Below, in pieces: positions 26,200 to 60,223 of a stretch of 64,000 bases of DNA. Location of the stretch: IMG/VR virus record IMGVR_UViG_3300042923_000569, positions 248,001 to 312,000 of that record, one strand, 5' to 3'. Both the position numbers and the translations under genes were made by a program. The stretch's first letter is position 1; each line of letters opens with the position of its first letter. The notes beneath the pieces are model-generated. The model was not told where the DNA came from, did no database searches, and saw only the letters and a list, made by a program, of their open reading frames with translations.

Positions 26200-27447
26200 T
26201 CACGACACGGCTTCTGTGTCAAGCCTAGAAATGAATTCTTCGGCATTATCTTTACATTCCAAGAAAAGTGCTTGTAAATCACAACCAGCTTTCGTTGAGA
26301 ATGTAATATCAGGTATATTTGCATCAGGGTACATTAGTTTAATATATTCCTTGATTTCAATATCTTCTAGATATGGTATTTCATATATATAATCAACCCT
26401 TCCTTTACGCACTACTGCTGGATCAACTTTTTCAAGATGGTTAGTAGTTAAGAAGATGATAGTACCGTTCAACGAAATCACACCATCTAGTACATTAAGA
26501 ATTTTTGATAGGCTTAACATTTCCATATCAAAGATATTATCGGATTGTGCTTTTGTTTCACGGTCATGAACTGCACTACATGAATCAAAGTCTTCAATCA
26601 GTACTATACTATTAGGTGGAATAGTACTCATTGCTTTTTCAAATGATTTATTACTCATAGTTGATAAATCAATGATACAAATATTTTTATTAAAGTTAGA
26701 TGCAATTGCTTTAATAGTACTACTCTTACCAGTGCCAGGTTTTCCATGTAAAATATAAGTTTGTTTACATGCTAGACCACGAGATGTGTACCAATCAGGA
26801 TTACTATAGAAGTACTCTAGGTTTTCTAGAATTTTATCTTTAATTTCTTTTTTGAGAATTACAGAAGATAATGGACGCTTCTTAACACTTGTCAAGTACT
26901 TCCAGTCTTCACCAGCAATTGTATAAATTCCCATATCGTCTTTCTTTGGTTTATATGCGAAGTCCTGTATTAATGCCATAATAGGCTTTTGGCTTCGACC
27001 AAAGGTTTTAATTACAATATGTTGCTTTTCTTTTTCTGAACCCTGTGAGTTTAAAGATGTTTTTTCAAACCAGAATAATCTTTTATTATAGAAGAAGAAG
27101 TGTTTACCATACCCTGCACCTACCACGTATGACTCATTATTATCGTTATCACTGTACCAACCGGTATTACCATCAAGAGATAAGTATCTAGACCATTTAG
27201 CATATGGTGATTTTAAAAACCAAGACATAAAAGCTTTAAACTGAGTCTCGTTTCCGGTATGTCCTGCGTTATTAAACTCTAAACTTGTCAGTACCTGTCT
27301 TTTTACAAACATAATAAATGTTGGAATAAACTTTAGACAGTACGTTAATACACCTAATCCCCATAATGAAACTGCCCCTGCTAACCAGGGATAGGTTTTC
27401 ATTGCCAGTACTAACTGTGCGTATAATCCCGCAACAAACTCGAACAT
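26200..27447 (-). CDS. BCS1-like AAA+ ATPase with N-terminal TM segment
   Basis: RPLSSVIL...WYTSRGL...Walker A GKPGTGKS, Walker B VLIEDFD, LNVLDG, TTNH..KVDPAVVRKGRVD. Confidence 0.9.
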   Translation of the reverse strand: MFEFVAGLYAQLVLAMKTYPWLAGAVSLWGLGVLTYCLKFIPTFIMFVKRQVLTSLEFNNAGHTGNETQFKAFMSWFLKSPYAKWSRYLSLDGNTGWYSDNDNNESYVVGAGYGKHFFFYNKRLFWFEKTSLNSQGSEKEKQHIVIKTFGRSQKPIMALIQDFAYKPKKDDMGIYTIAGEDWKYLTSVKKRPLSSVILKKEIKDKILENLEYFYSNPDWYTSRGLACKQTYILHGKPGTGKSSTIKAIASNFNKNICIIDLSTMSNKSFEKAMSTIPPNSIVLIEDFDSCSAVHDRETKAQSDNIFDMEMLSLSKILNVLDGVISLNGTIIFLTTNHLEKVDPAVVRKGRVDYIYEIPYLEDIEIKEYIKLMYPDANIPDITFSTKAGCDLQALFLECKDNAEEFISRLDTEAVS

Positions 27448-39783: not shown

Positions 39784-40113
39784 TTATTTAAGCTTAATGG
39801 AGGACGCAATTTCTTCCATTAGTTCTGCTGTAAATTCAATTCCGAACACTTCACTATATCGTTTAGAAGTACGCTCTAACCAATTAGTACTTTTCGTTGT
39901 GAAACCGTATTGTACGTTCTTAGCTGCGTTGTTGTAAGAGTTCCAAGGCTCGTTAGACGATGCATTTAAACGACCCCAATCAGTAATAGCAATGAAGCCT
40001 AGTGCTGATTCTTTACCCCGAAGAATGTTATAGACAATATGGTCTTCTGCGGTGTGTTCTTTCTTACTTTTCCAGGTTTTGATTACGGTGATGTATTGTT
40101 CTTTATTTAACAT
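39784..40113 (-). CDS. conserved phage hypothetical protein
   Basis: HIVYNILRGK motif; own AAGGA SD; preceded in frame by an amber-interrupted leader. Confidence 0.8.
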   Translation of the reverse strand: MLNKEQYITVIKTWKSKKEHTAEDHIVYNILRGKESALGFIAITDWGRLNASSNEPWNSYNNAAKNVQYGFTTKSTNWLERTSKRYSEVFGIEFTAELMEEIASSIKLK

Positions 40114-40194
40114 GATATGTTCCTTTAGATAATTTAATTTAGTTTGTTCTGAATTAAGTTTATCTGGAGGACCAGTACTAAATTTCTATAGCAT
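40114..40194 (-). promoter_or_regulatory. Met-Leu-amber leader, in frame with downstream CDS
   Basis: AAAGGT SD, ATG CTA TAG then KFSTGPPDKLNSEQTKLNYLKEHI-M with no other stop. Confidence 0.5.
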
Positions 40195-40222
40195 AATATT
40201 ACCTTTGTGCTTGTTTAATTTG

Positions 40223-40305
40223 AGCGGAATACAGGATTCGAACCTGCGTAAACTATTCGCCTCTTGCTTGGAAGGCAAGTGCTCTACCAACTGAGCTAAT
40301 CCCGC
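40223..40305 (-). tRNA. tRNA-Gly(UCC) with long variable region
   Basis: CTTGC-CTTCCAA-GCAAG; U73; 15-nt variable region AGGCGAATAGTTTAC. Confidence 0.88.
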
Positions 40306-40444
40306 TAGGATGTACTGCCGCTCTCAGTACTGTACATACTTAATCTTTACGATTTGACCTGTACAGGTGCAACGCGGTTCCCGTCATATAATTTTACAAG
40401 CTGGGGGAATCATACAAGCTTGTTTCACAAGGAAATGAAATCTT

Positions 40445-40693
40445 TTAAATTAAGGTTTCTGAAACTTCTACATTACTTACACTGTAGTAACGATCATACT
40501 CTGAAGTTTTCTTTTCATAATGTGCAATGAACTTACGCTCTGCATGATCTTCATCAAGAGCATAAACAATGTGCGACTTATTATAAGTTCTTGGTTCATC
40601 AACCATATAATCGCTAATTACCACTTTACCCGTTACAAAGTATGCAAGCATATCTCGTACTGGTGTTGTGTTACCATATTCTTCTTCGATCAT
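40445..40693 (-). CDS. hypothetical protein
   Basis: ORF with AAGG SD. Confidence 0.7.
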   Translation of the reverse strand: MIEEEYGNTTPVRDMLAYFVTGKVVISDYMVDEPRTYNKSHIVYALDEDHAERKFIAHYEKKTSEYDRYYSVSNVEVSETLI

Positions 40694-40714
40694 AATTTAC
40701 CTTATTTTATTTTG

Positions 40715-40788
40715 CAGGAGATGGTGGATTCGAACCACCGATACCGATTTCAAAGACCGGTGCATTAGGCCATCTATGCTAATCTCCT
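40715..40788 (-). tRNA. tRNA-Gln(UUG)
   Basis: CCGGT-CTTTGAA-ATCGG; G73. Confidence 0.92.
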
Positions 40789-40793
40789 AAGAC

Positions 40794-40847
40794 TAGAATC
40801 TATTGTTTTTCATATATCCAATGATGTTTGATTGCTGTTAGATTCTA
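40794..40847 (-). ncRNA. GAAUC/CAGCAA-module RNA B (minimal)
   Basis: TAGAATC-TA-ACAGCAATCA...TCAT-TGGATAT-ATGA...GATTCTA; near-identical to 41113-41166. Confidence 0.7.
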
Positions 40848-40852
40848 AATTT

Positions 40853-41083
40853 TTATTCTACTTCATGTTCCCAAACTAGTACTGCTTGCTCTAATATAGT
40901 AGTATCACCATAATAGGTTTCAAGAGTATAAGGGTACGTTTTCTGGTGCCATATTGTCTTTTGTGGGTCAGTCCATATATGTTTTAACATATCAGATACC
41001 ACAAAAATGTTATCACCGTCTACACCGATATAATCATCTTCACGACCTTCTCGTTGTAGTAAATACATTTTAATTTTTTTCAT
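40853..41083 (-). CDS. hypothetical protein
   Basis: ORF lying between RNA B and RNA C repeats. Confidence 0.7.
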   Translation of the reverse strand: MKKIKMYLLQREGREDDYIGVDGDNIFVVSDMLKHIWTDPQKTIWHQKTYPYTLETYYGDTTILEQAVLVWEHEVE

Positions 41084-41112
41084 TTAACGTCACCGTTTAT
41101 CTAAATTAAAAC

Positions 41113-41166
41113 TAGAATCCATCTTTTTTCATATATCCAATGATGTTTGATTGCTGTTAGATTCTA
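41113..41166 (-). ncRNA. GAAUC/CAGCAA-module RNA C (minimal)
   Basis: Direct repeat of RNA B. Confidence 0.7.
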
Positions 41167-41298
41167 AAAGAGAAAGTTTCAAATTGAGTTTACAGAAAGA
41201 TTTTCAAGATCTTAATACGTATTCTATTCCAACCTTATAGGATAACATGCTATCCGTATTGCACCATAGTACGCCTGGTGAATTTGAAACAAATTTTG

Positions 41299-41371
41299 CG
41301 ATCACGGCTGGATTTGAACCAGCGACCACTCGCTTAACAGGCGAACGCTCTAACCACTGAGCTACGTAACC
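41299..41371 (-). tRNA. tRNA-Asn(GUU)
   Basis: TTCGC-CTGTTAA-GCGAG; G73. Confidence 0.93.
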
Positions 41372-41390
41372 ATTTGTATTTCTTACTTAT

Positions 41391-41420
41391 ATTATACCAC
41401 AAAATTTTGCGGCGTTTCAT
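41391..41420 (-). promoter_or_regulatory. WTGAAAC-type phage promoter
   Basis: ATGAAACG...TGTGGTATAAT upstream of tRNA-Asn. Confidence 0.78.
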
Positions 41421-41424
41421 TTAT

Positions 41425-41602
41425 TTCAGTACTAATATCAATTTAATAATAAGGCCATATCGGTCGTTGCGACAATTTATATAACCCCTGCGTGTACTTT
41501 CGGAGTAATTAATTCCTATCCTTAACGATGTTATTTGCCTGCTGATAAATTATTCTAGAAGTAATTTAACGCACTTATTATTAAATTATTATTAGTACTG
41601 AA
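41425..41602. repeat. 178-nt element closed by a ~28-bp inverted repeat (rod-like ncRNA candidate)
   Basis: TTCAGTACTAATA-TC-AATTTAATAATAAG ... CTTATTATTAAATT-AT-TATTAGTACTGAA. Confidence 0.7.
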
Positions 41603-41709
41603 TTGTTGGGAGCCGCAGCGTAACTCCCGTCAGATGATAAGCCATCTGCTACCCATCGTACATAGTCTATAGCTTATTGAATCAGTGTACGTAAGCTCTT
41701 GTAGTGTTT

Positions 41710-42159
41710 TTAACAGCCAAAAAGTCCATAACCCATGCTCATATTCAAATCGCCCCAAAATCCGTTAAAGTCTGGAACTTCGTCATTAACGATTGAATAT
41801 TCAAAATCCAATTCAGTTTGTGCAATTCGCATTAATAAGTCAACAAAATAACTTGGGTCTTCGATAATATAATTAGGTTCTTCATCAGTACCGTCATTAA
41901 ACACCAAGTCACTAAATTTAACACCAGCATCAGCTAGATTCTGAGCATGTTCATTATTAAGTTGACTGTCTTCGTAATCATCAGCAATCAGAAATCGAGG
42001 ATGGTTACCTCCACTGATAATACCAATCTTAGTACCAGCAATCTTGAATGATTCTTGAACTTTTTCATTAGGTTCAGTACTTTCAACAATGAAGACTTCA
42101 TACTGATTGTGTCCATCTTTAGACCAATCACCAATATTAACTTTGAAACGATAACTCAT
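41710..42159 (-). CDS. conserved phage hypothetical protein
   Basis: IGDWSKDGH N-terminus and GYGLF C-terminus. Confidence 0.8.
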   Translation of the reverse strand: MSYRFKVNIGDWSKDGHNQYEVFIVESTEPNEKVQESFKIAGTKIGIISGGNHPRFLIADDYEDSQLNNEHAQNLADAGVKFSDLVFNDGTDEEPNYIIEDPSYFVDLLMRIAQTELDFEYSIVNDEVPDFNGFWGDLNMSMGYGLFGC

Positions 42160-42170
42160 GATTTTACCTT

Positions 42171-42761
42171 TTATTGACCAAACTTGGTCATAGCTTCTTC
42201 TAGTGTATATGAATTTACAACTTTAATAGATGCAACATTGTATATTATTACGAATACTTCACCATTATTAAACTTGTACGTATAAGCATCATACCCAAGT
42301 TGTGTTAATGCACGAACAAATTGCGTCGGATGACTGTTATACCAATCATACCATACTGACATAAGTGCATCATACATACTATCTTCACTCATATAATTAT
42401 CGAGTGCAGTACGAATAGCACGATTTTTGTCTTCGTCCCAATTTGTATATGCTTCATCATCAGGAGTATTCTGTATTAATTTTAGCAGTACTGCCTTGTT
42501 AATTTTCTGACTTTTTGATAGTTCTTTTCTTATTGTCAATTCACATTCATAAATCATACCCGTAGGGGATTTTTCACAATACCCACGTGCAGTAATTGGA
42601 TTAGATGTGAAATATATACCTGGCCCGTATTCATCGTTACCTCTACCAACGAATTCATCGCTGAATTGTGAAATTGGATTTTGTGTACCATGATAATAGT
42701 AACCGGATAGTTTACCTTCCATGATAGAAGATATATCTTCCATCAATTTTTTCATTTGCAT
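42171..42761 (-). CDS. putative ADP-ribosyltransferase-fold protein
   Basis: YYHGT...YGPGIYFTSN...ARGY...LGYDAY...E.FVIIYN (H-Y-E type ART pattern). Confidence 0.65.
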   Translation of the reverse strand: MQMKKLMEDISSIMEGKLSGYYYHGTQNPISQFSDEFVGRGNDEYGPGIYFTSNPITARGYCEKSPTGMIYECELTIRKELSKSQKINKAVLLKLIQNTPDDEAYTNWDEDKNRAIRTALDNYMSEDSMYDALMSVWYDWYNSHPTQFVRALTQLGYDAYTYKFNNGEVFVIIYNVASIKVVNSYTLEEAMTKFGQ

Positions 42762-42790
42762 AATTATGTCCCTAAGAGTTTTATTTTTAT

Positions 42791-43144
42791 TTACTTCTTA
42801 AAGAATAACCATCCAAATGCTCGTACACCAGCATACATCAGTACTGCACGAGGTTTACCAACGTTGGTATCTCTTAATGCTTGCATAAGAACTGCGTCAG
42901 CCTCTTTGCGGCTTAGATTCCCATAGTGGTATAGCCAATCATGTAGGGTTGCTGCGGAATGACCACGATCCCCAACCAGCTCAAATACTACCGGAATACG
43001 AGGAACACTTGCAAAATCTGTTTCAAACCCTGCTGGTACAATAATAGTACCGTGCTTCTTATCCTCGTAAATTAAATCAGATAGTAAACGCCACTTCTTA
43101 CCTTCGTTGTTAATTAACTCTACTTTTAAATGTGTAATGAACAT
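42791..43144 (-). CDS. DUF1353 family protein
   Basis: IIVPAGFETDFASVPR...AATLHDWLY...RKEAD...MYAGVRAFG. Confidence 0.9.
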   Translation of the reverse strand: MFITHLKVELINNEGKKWRLLSDLIYEDKKHGTIIVPAGFETDFASVPRIPVVFELVGDRGHSAATLHDWLYHYGNLSRKEADAVLMQALRDTNVGKPRAVLMYAGVRAFGWLFFKK

Positions 43145-43206
43145 ATTCCATCCTTGATTATAGTTAGTACTATAATATTTAAGAATAGATGTTCATTTTT
43201 AGGTAA

Positions 43207-43434
43207 TTATACCTTTTCGATAATAACAGTACTAGTACGTTTAACTACTGAAAAATTTTCAAGATACTGTTTACTGCGATTTAGAAATATATATGCATCG
43301 TCTTCAGTTTCAAACTCCATAGCACCGAAAAGTACTGGAAGTGTTATTACTGAATTTTGAAAACCAATGCTACTGAAAAACTCTTCAGTTTCGTTATCTT
43401 GTAACATATACGCAGTATTTGTATGAGTATACAT
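43207..43434 (-). CDS. hypothetical protein
   Basis: ORF with AAGGA SD. Confidence 0.7.
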   Translation of the reverse strand: MYTHTNTAYMLQDNETEEFFSSIGFQNSVITLPVLFGAMEFETEDDAYIFLNRSKQYLENFSVVKRTSTVIIEKV

Positions 43435-43459
43435 GCAATATTTCCTTTATTATAATTGC

Positions 43460-43580
43460 TGGAATTCATTTAATTTTTGACCGCTGCGTCTACCGATTTC
43501 GCCACTTGCACCGAAGTGCAAGGCAGGACTCGAACCTGCAAAAAGCTGTTTGCTATTAGTGTGTTTGCTGCTGAATTCCA
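43460..43580 (-). ncRNA. GAAUC/CAGCAA-module RNA D (circularly permuted tRNA mimic)
   Basis: TGGAATTC-A-GCAGCAAACA...T-arm GCAGG-TTCGAGT-CCTGC, acceptor CTTGCAC-TTCG-GTGCAAG, D-arm TGGCGAAATCGGTAGACGC...GAATTCCA. Confidence 0.85.
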
Positions 43581-43590
43581 AATTTATTAT

Positions 43591-43667
43591 TGGTGGGAAT
43601 AACTGGACTCGAACCAGTGACCTCTCCCTTATCAGGGGAGTGCTCTAACCAACTGAGCTATATTCCC
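43591..43667 (-). tRNA. tRNA-Ile(GAU)
   Basis: CTCCC-CTGATAA-GGGAG; CCA encoded. Confidence 0.95.
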
Positions 43668-43675
43668 GTACTACT

Positions 43676-44134
43676 TTACATATTATACCGTCTGTTTAAC
43701 CAATTATCATCGATACGAGTACGGCGTTCTCTTTCCGCGAATTCATCATCCAATTTCTTCACTGCTTCACAGATGCTGTCAATTTGCTCTTGAGTAGGTT
43801 CCCAAGTTTTTATGAACTCATATAGATCATTAACTGTCATTTTACCGTCAGTAAGAGGGTCTTTCACTTCAGTACTGTCAGGTTCTTCTACATGAGATTT
43901 AATGATTGGTTTAGCTTCTTCCTGCCAACCACGAGGCATCCAGTTGTCGTCTTCTAATTCACAAGACATTAGCTCTGTTGGATTCATTGTAGTATCACCA
44001 TAGAAAACATGATACAATTCACCATTCTTGTTCAGATAAAGACGTTCATTGGATCTGAACTTTGGAAGTTCAAATAAAATACCGTCTTCACCTGAATCTT
44101 GGAGTAGTTTTTTGATTTCGTTAAAAGTCATCAC
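43676..44134 (-). CDS. hypothetical protein
   Basis: ORF. Confidence 0.75.
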   Translation of the reverse strand: MMTFNEIKKLLQDSGEDGILFELPKFRSNERLYLNKNGELYHVFYGDTTMNPTELMSCELEDDNWMPRGWQEEAKPIIKSHVEEPDSTEVKDPLTDGKMTVNDLYEFIKTWEPTQEQIDSICEAVKKLDDEFAERERRTRIDDNWLNRRYNM

Positions 44135-51389: not shown

Positions 51390-51513
51390 TGGCGGCGAGT
51401 ACTGGATTCGAACCAGTGACCAGGACATTAAAAGTGTATGAGTTATGGTTGCTGCGGGAATCCAATCAGGATTCCTTGGGTTCTACCTGCTCTACCAACT
51501 GAGCTAACTCGCC
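51390..51513 (-). ncRNA. tRNA-Lys(UUU) interrupted by a 48-nt GAAUC/CAGCAA module (RNA I)
   Basis: Removing 51438-51485 gives a 76-nt cloverleaf with GGACA-CTTTTAA-TGTCC and CCA. Confidence 0.88.
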
Positions 51514-60098: not shown

Positions 60099-60173
60099 TG
60101 GTGCCCCTGACAGGATTCGAACCCGCGAATCACGGTTTTAGGGACCGCTGTTCTACCATAGAACGGCAGGGGC
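60099..60173 (-). tRNA. amber suppressor-like tRNA (CUA)
   Basis: GCGGT-CCCTAAA-ACCGT; full cloverleaf and CCA; C8 and C33 are non-canonical. Confidence 0.75.
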
Positions 60174-60193: not shown

Positions 60194-60223
60194 ATTATAC
60201 CACAGTTTTTCGAGCCGTTTCAA
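60194..60223 (-). promoter_or_regulatory. WTGAAAC-type phage promoter
   Basis: TTGAAACG...TGTGGTATAAT upstream of the CUA tRNA. Confidence 0.78.

What the first reader, a model, noticed from the sequence alone, without database searches (positions are those of the whole stretch)
41425..41602. 178-nt rod with long closing stem and central bubble, a 6S RNA-like geometry
Seen: a ~28-bp terminal inverted repeat, then unpaired strands of about 20 and 18 nt, then inner stems ATAATTTAT/ATAAATTGT and ATAAC/GTTAT. Established: 6S RNA is a ~180-nt rod with a central bubble that sequesters sigma70 holoenzyme. Inference: a phage promoter-mimic RNA could help switch RNA polymerase to the phage sigma factor. 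It could instead be a MITE-like element or an RNase III substrate.
Basis: inference. Interest (0 to 1): 0.62.

Follow-up and report, generated by a model that had tools for sequence, protein, structure and literature searches.

The report
Conserved structured RNA in phage tRNA cluster
The 178-base inverted repeat is real and is a conserved folded RNA gene of unknown job, found among the tRNA genes of a few giant phages; its 17-base core is identical even in very distant relatives, but nothing shows it is a 6S-like decoy of RNA polymerase.

Summary
The window belongs to a 357,873-bp jumbo phage of the CBB/GAP32 (Rak2-like) group. All genes and 26 tRNAs lie on the minus strand.

**Observation.** The inverted repeat at 41425-41453 / 41574-41602 is real: 29 nt, 27 of 29 complementary, fold z about -5 to -6. 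It is one of only four such repeats in the genome.

**Structure.** Relatives show a three-way junction, not a rod with a two-stranded bubble:
- a closing stem P1;
- a hairpin H1;
- a composite arm H2;
- a 17-nt strand, GCAACGACCGAUAUGGC, between H2 and P1.

The same layout occurs in five phage sequences from three lineages: the window phage and two close kin, CBB, and a distant 335-kb phage. Stem sequences are wholly replaced, yet pairing is kept. The 17-mer is identical although shared proteins are only 25-58% identical. Wobble pairs favour the minus, transcribed strand.

**What it is not.**
- 6S: no Rfam family matches, 6S included.
- MITE: single copy, arms covary, no target duplication.
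- Y RNA: no TROVE gene.
- Antisense RNA: no target better than chance.

**Best reading.** A small stable RNA cut out of the tRNA/ORF transcript, as with T4 rnaC/rnaD, that acts through its invariant single strand. Function and expression are untested. A second conserved structured RNA abuts it at 41603-41712.

The parts
41574..41602 (-). P1, 5' strand of the closing stem (RNA positions 1-29, minus sense)
   Evidence: Inverted repeat. Two compensatory pairs and one U-G/C-G change against L011. Sequence fully replaced but pairing kept in CBB and G001. Pairing beats shuffles with z -5.6, -6.6, -2.6 and -8.9 in the four sequences.
41540..41573 (-). H1, local hairpin: 7-bp stem and a 9-nt loop that holds the palindrome UCUAGA
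   Evidence: One compensatory A-U to G-C pair against L011. CBB has an 8-bp stem of different sequence whose loop again holds UUCUAGA. G001 has a short GC hairpin at the same place.
41471..41539 (-). H2, composite arm: stem a GGCAA/UUGUC, a 5-nt bulge on the 3' side (AUAAA), stem b AUAAC/GUUAU, then a 44-nt distal part
   Evidence: Stem a (4-5 bp), a 3' bulge of 4-5 nt and stem b (5-6 bp) recur with different sequences in L011, CBB and G001. The G-U in stem a of the window is G-C in L011. Segment coordinates.
41454..41470 (-). Invariant 17-nt core GCAACGACCGAUAUGGC, the strand joining H2 to P1
   Evidence: Identical in the window, L087, L011, CBB and G001. Absent at up to 3 mismatches from BF and GAP32. 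Keeping it unpaired costs only 2-6 kcal/mol.
41425..41453 (-). P1, 3' strand of the closing stem
   Evidence: As for the 5' strand.
41391..41419 (-). Phage promoter of the TGAAACG type (-35 TGAAACG, extended -10 TGTGGTATAAT), 5 nt after the element, driving tRNA-Asn. It bounds the element but is not part of the RNA
   Evidence: Best promoter-like site in the region, 10 of 12 with TG. One of seven near-identical sites on the minus strand of the window. This promoter type is described for CBB and GAP32 in PMC5259590.
41298..41371 (-). tRNA-Asn (GTT), the next gene downstream in the sense direction
   Evidence: ARAGORN and Rfam.
41603..41712 (-). Element X, a second conserved structured non-coding module that abuts the 5' end of the rod in this phage only
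   Evidence: 87-92% identical to unannotated intergenic DNA of GAP32 and CBB. Absent here in L087 and L011, whose homology breaks exactly at 41602. Three hairpins with 4 compensatory pairs.

Best explanation
The element is a gene for a small, stable, structured non-coding RNA of about 160-180 nt, read from the minus strand. It is one of the shufflable modules (tRNAs, small ORFs, element X) in the tRNA region of CBB/GAP32-like jumbo phages.

It is transcribed as part of the long tRNA/ORF transcripts and then cut out. The cut could come from the enzymes that trim the adjacent tRNA, or from RNase III acting on the long closing stem.

The mature RNA is a three-way junction. Its working part is the invariant single-stranded 17-mer held between arm H2 and stem P1, which binds a highly conserved partner, more likely a protein or a machine of the host or of the phage core than an RNA target.

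Shown: the fold, its conservation, the invariance of the core, the strand bias and the genomic placement. Inferred: transcription, excision, stability, action in trans and the nature of the partner.
For: 1. Real and rare fold.
2. Five sequences from three lineages share P1-H1-H2-core-P1'. P1 and both H2 stems are replaced in sequence with pairing kept. Against the closest diverged relative there are three compensatory pairs.
3. The 17-mer is identical between phages that share only about 75 ORFs at 25-58% amino-acid identity, so selection acts on the sequence itself.
4. Strand: four G-U wobbles in covariation-supported helices are legal only in the minus sense (window P1 x1, window H2 stem a x1, G001 P1 x2). 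All genes and tRNAs run on that strand.
5. It behaves as an independent module:
- In the window it lies downstream of the 149-aa ORF.
- In CBB it lies upstream of that ORF's homologue.
- In G001 it starts 4 nt after the CCA of tRNA-His.
- In CBB it starts a few nt after a decayed tRNA 3' half.
- Homology with L087 and L011 breaks exactly at its 5' edge.
6. There is no open reading frame on the sense strand. The one ORF of 20 aa or more that overlaps it lies on the other strand and also covers the promoter.
7. Precedent: T4 carries two adjacent stable RNAs of unknown function, rnaD and rnaC, at the end of its tRNA cluster (PMC9697503). Here, too, two structured modules lie side by side, X and the rod.
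Against:
- Minimum free energies do not favour the sense strand.
- One small inner hairpin pairs better in the plus sense.
- Only three independent lineages exist, so the distal part of H2 is not resolved.
- No own promoter or terminator was found for the element.
- No gene co-occurs with it.
- No partner is identified.
- P1 in CBB is short (about 14 bp with a bulge), which is poor for RNase III.
Confidence: 0.45

Rival explanations
1. A cis-acting RNA processing and stability module. The long stem is an RNase III site, or a barrier to 3' exonucleases, that separates the upstream mRNA from the downstream tRNA unit and sets their half-lives. No free RNA has a function of its own.
For: There is a 27-of-29 perfect-pair stem. 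The element always lies between transcription units, 5 nt ahead of a promoter in the window and just after an ORF stop in L011 and L087.
Against: A processing stem needs neither a 17-nt invariant single strand nor conserved H1 and H2 arms. The stems in CBB (about 14 bp) and G001 (19 bp) are short for RNase III. The position relative to the same ORF differs between the window and CBB.
Confidence: 0.2
2. A 6S-like decoy of host RNA polymerase. The closing stem and H2 mimic promoter duplexes and the 17-mer mimics an opened strand, possibly as a mirror-image (permuted) version of 6S that templates a short product RNA.
For: Similar length. A long closing stem and an apical arm flank a large unpaired strand. 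The core holds CCGAUAU, as does the 5' part of the E. coli 6S bubble. An invariant strand fits a very conserved partner such as RNA polymerase.
Against: There is no 6S covariance-model match (positive control). The open strand is on the 3' side and the other side is a hairpin. The conserved 6S flanking helices are absent. P1 is too short in CBB and G001 to reach a -35-like contact. The heptamer match is weak evidence.
Confidence: 0.08
3. A DNA-level element: a cruciform or protein-binding site used for recombination, module shuffling, replication initiation or homing, with the 17-mer as the recognition sequence.
For: The region is strongly mosaic, with blocks of 99-100% identity next to blocks of 58-75%. 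One homology break coincides with the element's edge. Both strands fold about equally well.
Against: Four wobble pairs are legal only as minus-sense RNA. There is no GC-skew turn near the element in G000, G001 or CBB. Covariation of three separate helices is not expected for a protein-binding DNA site. No endonuclease or recombinase gene travels with it.
Confidence: 0.12
4. A miniature inverted-repeat transposable element (MITE) or another passive insertion.
For: Terminal inverted repeats of 29 nt flank about 120 nt. Distribution among related phages is sporadic.
Against: It is single copy in each of five genomes. The arms differ completely between lineages while an internal 17-mer is invariant, the reverse of a transposon. 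There is no target-site duplication and no transposase.
Confidence: 0.02

Closest known systems
Phage T4 rnaC and rnaD (species 1 and species 2 stable RNAs)
   Same: Small RNAs of 119-139 nt with unknown function. They are encoded on the same strand as the tRNAs, directly behind one of them in the tRNA cluster of a T4-related myovirus, and lie next to each other (PMC9697503). Here the rod and X are likewise adjacent, and in G001 the rod starts 4 nt after a tRNA.
   Different: No homology was found. T4 rnaC ends in a tRNA-like T arm and acceptor-like stem, which the rod lacks. The shared 11-mer GAUAUGGCCUU is probably chance. Expression is proven for T4, not here.
6S RNA (Rfam RF00013)
   Same: About 180 nt, with a closing stem formed by the two ends, an apical arm and a large unpaired stretch in the middle.
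   Different: No model match. The fold is a three-way junction, the conserved flanking helices are absent, and the open strand is on the 3' side. RNA polymerase binding and product RNA are untested.
RNase III processing stems (T7 early mRNA sites; stems flanking 16S and 23S rRNA). From general knowledge
   Same: Long-range inverted repeats form at least 20 bp of duplex around an RNA that is then cut out of a longer transcript.
   Different: Such stems carry no invariant junction strand. The stems of CBB and G001 are shorter than typical substrates.
Bacterial Y RNA-like YrlA (Rfam RF02553)
   Same: A long stem formed by the 5' and 3' ends carries a structured module, and the gene lies near tRNA-like sequences.
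   Different: The genome has no Ro/TROVE gene and the element gives no YrlA hit. The weak YrlA hit in CBB falls on the neighbouring decayed tRNA.
phi29 packaging RNA (pRNA). From general knowledge
   Same: A phage RNA of about 174 nt built on a three-way junction, with a closing helix and loops that pair between molecules. The H1 loop here holds a 6-nt palindrome that could form a kissing dimer.
   Different: No homology, and these myoviruses are not known to need such an RNA. The palindromic loop is absent in G001.

Membership tests
6S RNA (RF00013) | Match to the family covariance model | tested here: not met
   No hit at the gathering score in the window, nor at E up to 10 in 41350-41720 on both strands. 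E. coli ssrS scores 139.8 bits in the same library.
6S RNA (RF00013) | Rod with a central bubble of two largely open strands between a closing stem and an apical stem | tested here: not met
   The comparative fold is a three-way junction. The 5' side is a conserved hairpin (H1) and only the 3' side (17 nt) is open.
6S RNA (RF00013) | Conserved helices flanking the bubble (consensus CuGAgCC / GGuUCaAg) | tested here: not met
   The consensus is shown. The element sequence has no such segments.
6S RNA (RF00013) | Binds sigma70 holoenzyme and templates a product RNA | not testable with these tools
   This needs gel shift and in vitro transcription.
MITE / terminal-inverted-repeat transposon | Several copies with conserved terminal repeats | tested here: not met
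   One copy per genome. The arm sequences are unrelated between lineages.
MITE / terminal-inverted-repeat transposon | Target-site duplication at the ends | tested here: not met
   The flanks ...CATTTAT and TTGTTGG... are not direct repeats.
Y RNA-like (YrlA) with Ro protein | Ro/TROVE gene in the genome and a model match | tested here: not met
   PF05731 is absent from G000, with positive controls. The element gives no YrlA hit.
tRNA / tmRNA | Cloverleaf or tRNA-like domain recognised by ARAGORN or Rfam | tested here: not met
   ARAGORN finds nothing in 41381-41760 even with relaxed scoring, and Rfam finds no tRNA or tmRNA there.
T4 rnaC / rnaD type stable RNAs of phage tRNA clusters (a functional kind, not a homology family) | Non-tRNA structured RNA gene placed within or next to the tRNA cluster on the tRNA strand | tested here: met
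   In G001 it starts 4 nt after the CCA of tRNA-His.
T4 rnaC / rnaD type stable RNAs of phage tRNA clusters (a functional kind, not a homology family) | Accumulates as a discrete stable RNA during infection | not testable with these tools
T4 rnaC / rnaD type stable RNAs of phage tRNA clusters (a functional kind, not a homology family) | Sequence or structure homology to T4 rnaC or rnaD | tested here: not met
   The folds differ: rnaC has a T-arm-like hairpin. Only an 11-mer is shared.

The most novel reading that the evidence does not exclude
The RNA is a phage-made decoy or cofactor that docks, through its invariant 17-mer, onto a universally conserved host machine such as RNA polymerase. In that case it would be a mirror-image 6S-like RNA whose open strand templates a short product starting AUCGG. 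Other candidate machines are the ribosome or a tRNA-processing enzyme. Either way it would be a new class of trans-acting RNA by which jumbo phages take over the host.
Probability: 0.12. Interest if true: 0.85.

Novelty: new variant of a known kind. Interest (0 to 1): 0.58.

Why it matters
Phage tRNA clusters are usually annotated as tRNAs plus small hypothetical ORFs. This region holds at least two further structured RNA modules, both unannotated in the deposited CBB and GAP32 records.

The rod has a 17-base strand that is identical in phages whose shared proteins are only about a third identical. That degree of conservation is normally seen in tRNA, rRNA or catalytic RNA, and it points to a direct contact with something equally conserved.

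The function of T4 rnaC and rnaD has stayed unknown for decades. A second, unrelated family in the same genomic niche, carried by a phage that can be grown (CBB), gives a fresh way to ask what such RNAs do.

Tried and rejected
- **Rfam.** No family but tRNA in the window at the gathering score, and only chance-level hits over the element at E up to 10.
- **Y RNA.** No TROVE gene in the genome.
- **Antisense to the phage's own genome.** No complement of 12 nt or more to the core. One 11-mer was found, against 0.24 expected.
- **Antisense to host stable RNAs.** Duplexes of the core with E. coli 16S, 23S and 5S rRNA, three tRNAs, rnpB, the ssrA region and ssrS are no better than duplexes of shuffled cores.
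- **Core copied from, or exactly complementary to, a bacterial gene.** The exact 17-mer occurs 64 times across 185,579 species genomes, in scattered taxa and in no Enterobacterales. My own estimate of the chance expectation is about 70.
- **Partner gene by presence/absence.** No ORF of G000 is present in G001 and CBB yet absent from BF and GAP32.
- **Replication origin.** There is no cumulative GC-skew turn near the element.
- **Small ORF or tmRNA-like tag.** The frames after the core end at different places and encode unrelated short peptides, there is no Shine-Dalgarno sequence, and ARAGORN finds no tmRNA.
- **More family members.**
  - Exact and gapped core patterns in viral, metagenome and genome collections gave only the same lineages, plus one new close relative, L087.
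  - One search found nothing because I set the gap 1-2 nt too short.
  - Protein-anchored searches returned only known genomes.
  - G001 has no relatives in the phage collection for this region.
- **T4 rnaC similarity.** It is limited to an 11-mer.

Full report
**Context**

The window is bases 248,001-312,000 of a 357,873-bp phage genome with direct terminal repeats. Its nearest named relatives are Pectobacterium phage CBB, Cronobacter phage GAP32, Serratia phage BF and the Erwinia pEa_SNUABM phages. These are the Rak2-like jumbo myoviruses, distantly related to T4 (PMC5259590).

In this part of the genome all plausible genes and 26 tRNA genes lie on the minus strand. In the sense (minus) direction the finding sits between a 149-aa ORF (41710-42159) and tRNA-Asn (41298-41371).

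Yes for the inverted repeat.
- The arms 41425-41453 and 41574-41602 are 29 nt long and 93% complementary.
- The 178-nt stretch folds with z = -6.1 on the plus strand and -5.1 on the minus strand. None of 200 dinucleotide shuffles does as well.
- A scan of the whole genome finds only four inverted repeats with exact arms of at least 14 nt lying 40-500 nt apart.
- The element is single copy.

**Relatives**

An exact search for an inner 17-mer, followed by a covariance model built from the first two sequences, found the element in four other places:
- a 355-kb phage from a metagenome (L011 = G002; 161 of 177 aligned positions identical);
- a 20.9-kb contig (L087; one difference);
- phage CBB (L004:2039-2199, minus strand);
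- a 335-kb phage, G001 (L007:2423-2591, minus strand).

G001 is only a distant relative. Just 76 of 898 ORFs of the window's genome have a match there, at 25-58% amino-acid identity.

The element is absent from BF, GAP32, XbC2, fHe-Yen9-03, fHe-Yen9-04 and Kaldavass. In those genomes the model matches only short hairpins. The core is missing from BF and GAP32 even with three mismatches allowed. Further pattern scans of the viral, metagenome and genome collections added nothing.

**Anatomy**

Coordinates below are RNA positions in the minus sense. The window coordinate is 41602 minus (position - 1).

With the 17-mer held unpaired, L011, L087, CBB and G001 fold the same way. The window's own constrained fold shows P1 and H1 but not stems a and b of H2. 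Its near-identical relative L087 forms both, and the window bases GGCAA/UUGUC and AUAAC/GUUAT can pair in the same way. The parts, are:
- **P1**, positions 1-29 pairing with 150-178.
- **H1**, within 30-63: a 7-bp stem and a 9-nt loop.
- **H2**, positions 64-132:
  - stem a, GGCAA/UUGUC;
  - a 5-nt bulge on the 3' side;
  - stem b, AUAAC/GUUAU;
  - a 44-nt distal part.
- **The single strand** GCAACGACCGAUAUGGC, positions 133-149, which runs straight into the 3' strand of P1.

Evidence that the pairing is selected:
- Against L011, P1 has two compensatory pairs and one U-G/C-G change. H1 has one compensatory pair, and the G-U in stem a becomes G-C.
- In CBB and G001 the sequences of P1, stem a and stem b are entirely different, yet they pair at the same places. 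The 3' bulge of 4-5 nt is also kept.
- The 20 nt after the core pair with the expected upstream segment far better than with shuffled versions of it:

| Sequence | z | Shuffles of 1000 at least as good |
|---|---|---|
| Window | -5.6 | 1 |
| L011 | -6.6 | 0 |
| CBB | -2.6 | 21 |
| G001 | -8.9 | 0 |

**Strand, and RNA versus DNA**

Minimum free energies do not separate the strands. The wobble pairs do. In helices supported by covariation there are four G-U pairs that are legal only in the minus sense:
- one in P1 of the window;
- one in stem a of the window;
- two in P1 of G001.

None is legal only in the plus sense. One small inner hairpin, not supported by covariation, pairs better in the plus sense.

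Together with the direction of all neighbouring genes, this makes a minus-sense RNA the likely active form. I put that at about three in four. The only ORF of 20 aa or more that overlaps the element lies on the other strand and also covers the promoter, so it is not credible.

**Genomic behaviour**

The element behaves as an independent module.
- In the window, L011 and L087 it lies downstream of the 149-aa ORF. In CBB it lies upstream of that ORF's homologue, CBB_457 (52% identity).
- In G001 its first base comes 4 nt after the encoded CCA of tRNA-His, and it is followed by an unrelated 131-aa ORF.
- In CBB it starts a few bases after the T-arm and acceptor remnant of a decayed tRNA.
- The alignment of the window with L087 and L011 breaks exactly at 41602, the outer edge of P1.
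- The whole region is a mosaic of blocks at 99-100% identity next to blocks at 58-75%.

Five bases after the element lies the best promoter-like site of the region: TGAAACG, then 14 nt, then TGTGGTATAAT. It is one of seven near-identical sites on the minus strand of the window. This promoter type, with -35 TGAAACG, was described for CBB and GAP32 (PMC5259590).

No promoter or intrinsic terminator belongs to the element itself. It is therefore presumably made by read-through from upstream and then processed.

**What it is not**

- **6S RNA.** See the membership table: no model match with a working positive control, different topology, and no conserved flanking helices. The core shares CCGAUAU with the 5' part of the E. 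coli 6S bubble. From memory, that is where the product RNA starts. Here the heptamer sits on the other side of the junction, so only a mirror-image arrangement would fit. A heptamer match is expected by chance about once in ten such comparisons (my estimate). I keep this as a minority reading.
- **MITE.** Single copy, arms that covary instead of being conserved, and no target duplication.
- **Y RNA.** No TROVE gene.
- **tRNA or tmRNA.** Nothing is recognised.
- **Antisense regulator.** There is no target better than chance in the phage or among E. coli stable RNAs. The 17-mer is not a piece of any enterobacterial genome.
- **Replication origin.** No skew signal.

**Most likely mechanism**

The identity of 17 consecutive bases between phages whose shared proteins are about one-third identical means that the sequence itself is read by something equally conserved. 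The stems merely present it.

The placement right behind tRNAs, the independence from neighbouring ORFs and the precedent of T4 all point the same way. In T4, rnaD and rnaC follow tRNA-Arg, accumulate late and still have no known function (PMC9697503). The likely reading is a small stable RNA released from the tRNA/ORF transcript.

The 27-of-29 pair stem of the window would be a good RNase III substrate. The shorter stems of CBB and G001 make that step uncertain.

The 9-nt H1 loop of the window lineage has two bases, then the palindrome UCUAGA, then one base. The CBB loop again contains UUCUAGA. This could allow a kissing dimer. It is a lead only, and G001 lacks it.

Everything about expression, excision and the partner is inference.

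**A second element, noticed on the way**

The 110 nt directly 5' of the rod (41603-41712, minus sense) are missing at this place in L087 and L011. They are 87-92% identical to unannotated intergenic DNA of GAP32 (308,869-308,970) and CBB (304,461-304,563), which is far above the roughly 72% seen for the surrounding region.

This stretch forms three hairpins with four compensatory pairs among three sequences, and two U-G pairs that are legal only in the minus sense. It is absent from G002, G001, BF and Kaldavass, and XbC2 has only a 21-nt match. No Rfam family matches it.

So the tRNA region of these phages carries at least two families of shuffled, structured, non-tRNA RNA modules.

**Verdict**

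- The structure is a conserved three-way junction with an invariant strand.
- The 6S reading is unsupported but not excluded.
- The MITE reading is rejected.
- The best reading is a new family of phage stable RNA of unknown function.

Noticed in passing
window 41603-41712 (minus sense); GAP32 308869-308970; CBB 304461-304563: Element X is a second conserved non-coding module with three hairpins and four compensatory pairs. It is 87-92% identical across phages whose surrounding DNA is about 72% identical. It is unannotated in both deposited genomes and sits at a different place in each.
   Followed up: partly
window minus strand, -35 boxes at 60222, 46252, 41419, 35312, 25015, 24939, 9502: Seven near-identical promoter-like sites: AAAAWA TGAAACG, 13-14 nt, TGTGGTATAAT. 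This is the 'divergent RpoD-like' type reported for CBB and GAP32, and several sit in front of tRNA genes (PMC5259590).
   Followed up: partly
window 40000-43700 compared with L087 and L088: Sharp mosaicism. tRNA-Asn, tRNA-Gln and tRNA-Gly are each either 100% or about 58-60% identical between close relatives, so whole tRNA alleles are swapped as cassettes.
   Followed up: no
window, 24 sites such as 5702, 25742, 35362, 44775: The 13-mer TTCAGTACTAATA from the outer end of P1 has 24 matches with up to two mismatches, against 4.0 expected (0 of 100 shuffles reach this). The shared part is mostly TTCAGTACT. The meaning is unknown.
   Followed up: no
window 51393-51513 and 60102-60173 (minus): Rfam reports tRNA matches that ARAGORN does not list. 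One spans 121 nt at 47 bits, possibly a tRNA with an insertion or intron. The other is a 72-nt match next to tRNA-Arg.
   Followed up: no
L004 1988-2040 and 2198-2256 (CBB, minus): Two decayed tRNA fragments, a D-arm half and a T-arm/acceptor half, flank the CBB copy of the element.
   Followed up: partly
window 26200-27447 (minus, 415 aa) and G000 325799-327028: A pair of paralogous ORFs. The first has a match in the distant phage G001 but none in CBB, BF or GAP32.
   Followed up: no
L014 3909-4047 (T4 rnaC): T4 rnaC shares the 11-mer GAUAUGGCCUU with the 3' end of the core and the start of P1 in the window. It is probably chance, as it lies in a paired region of rnaC.
   Followed up: partly
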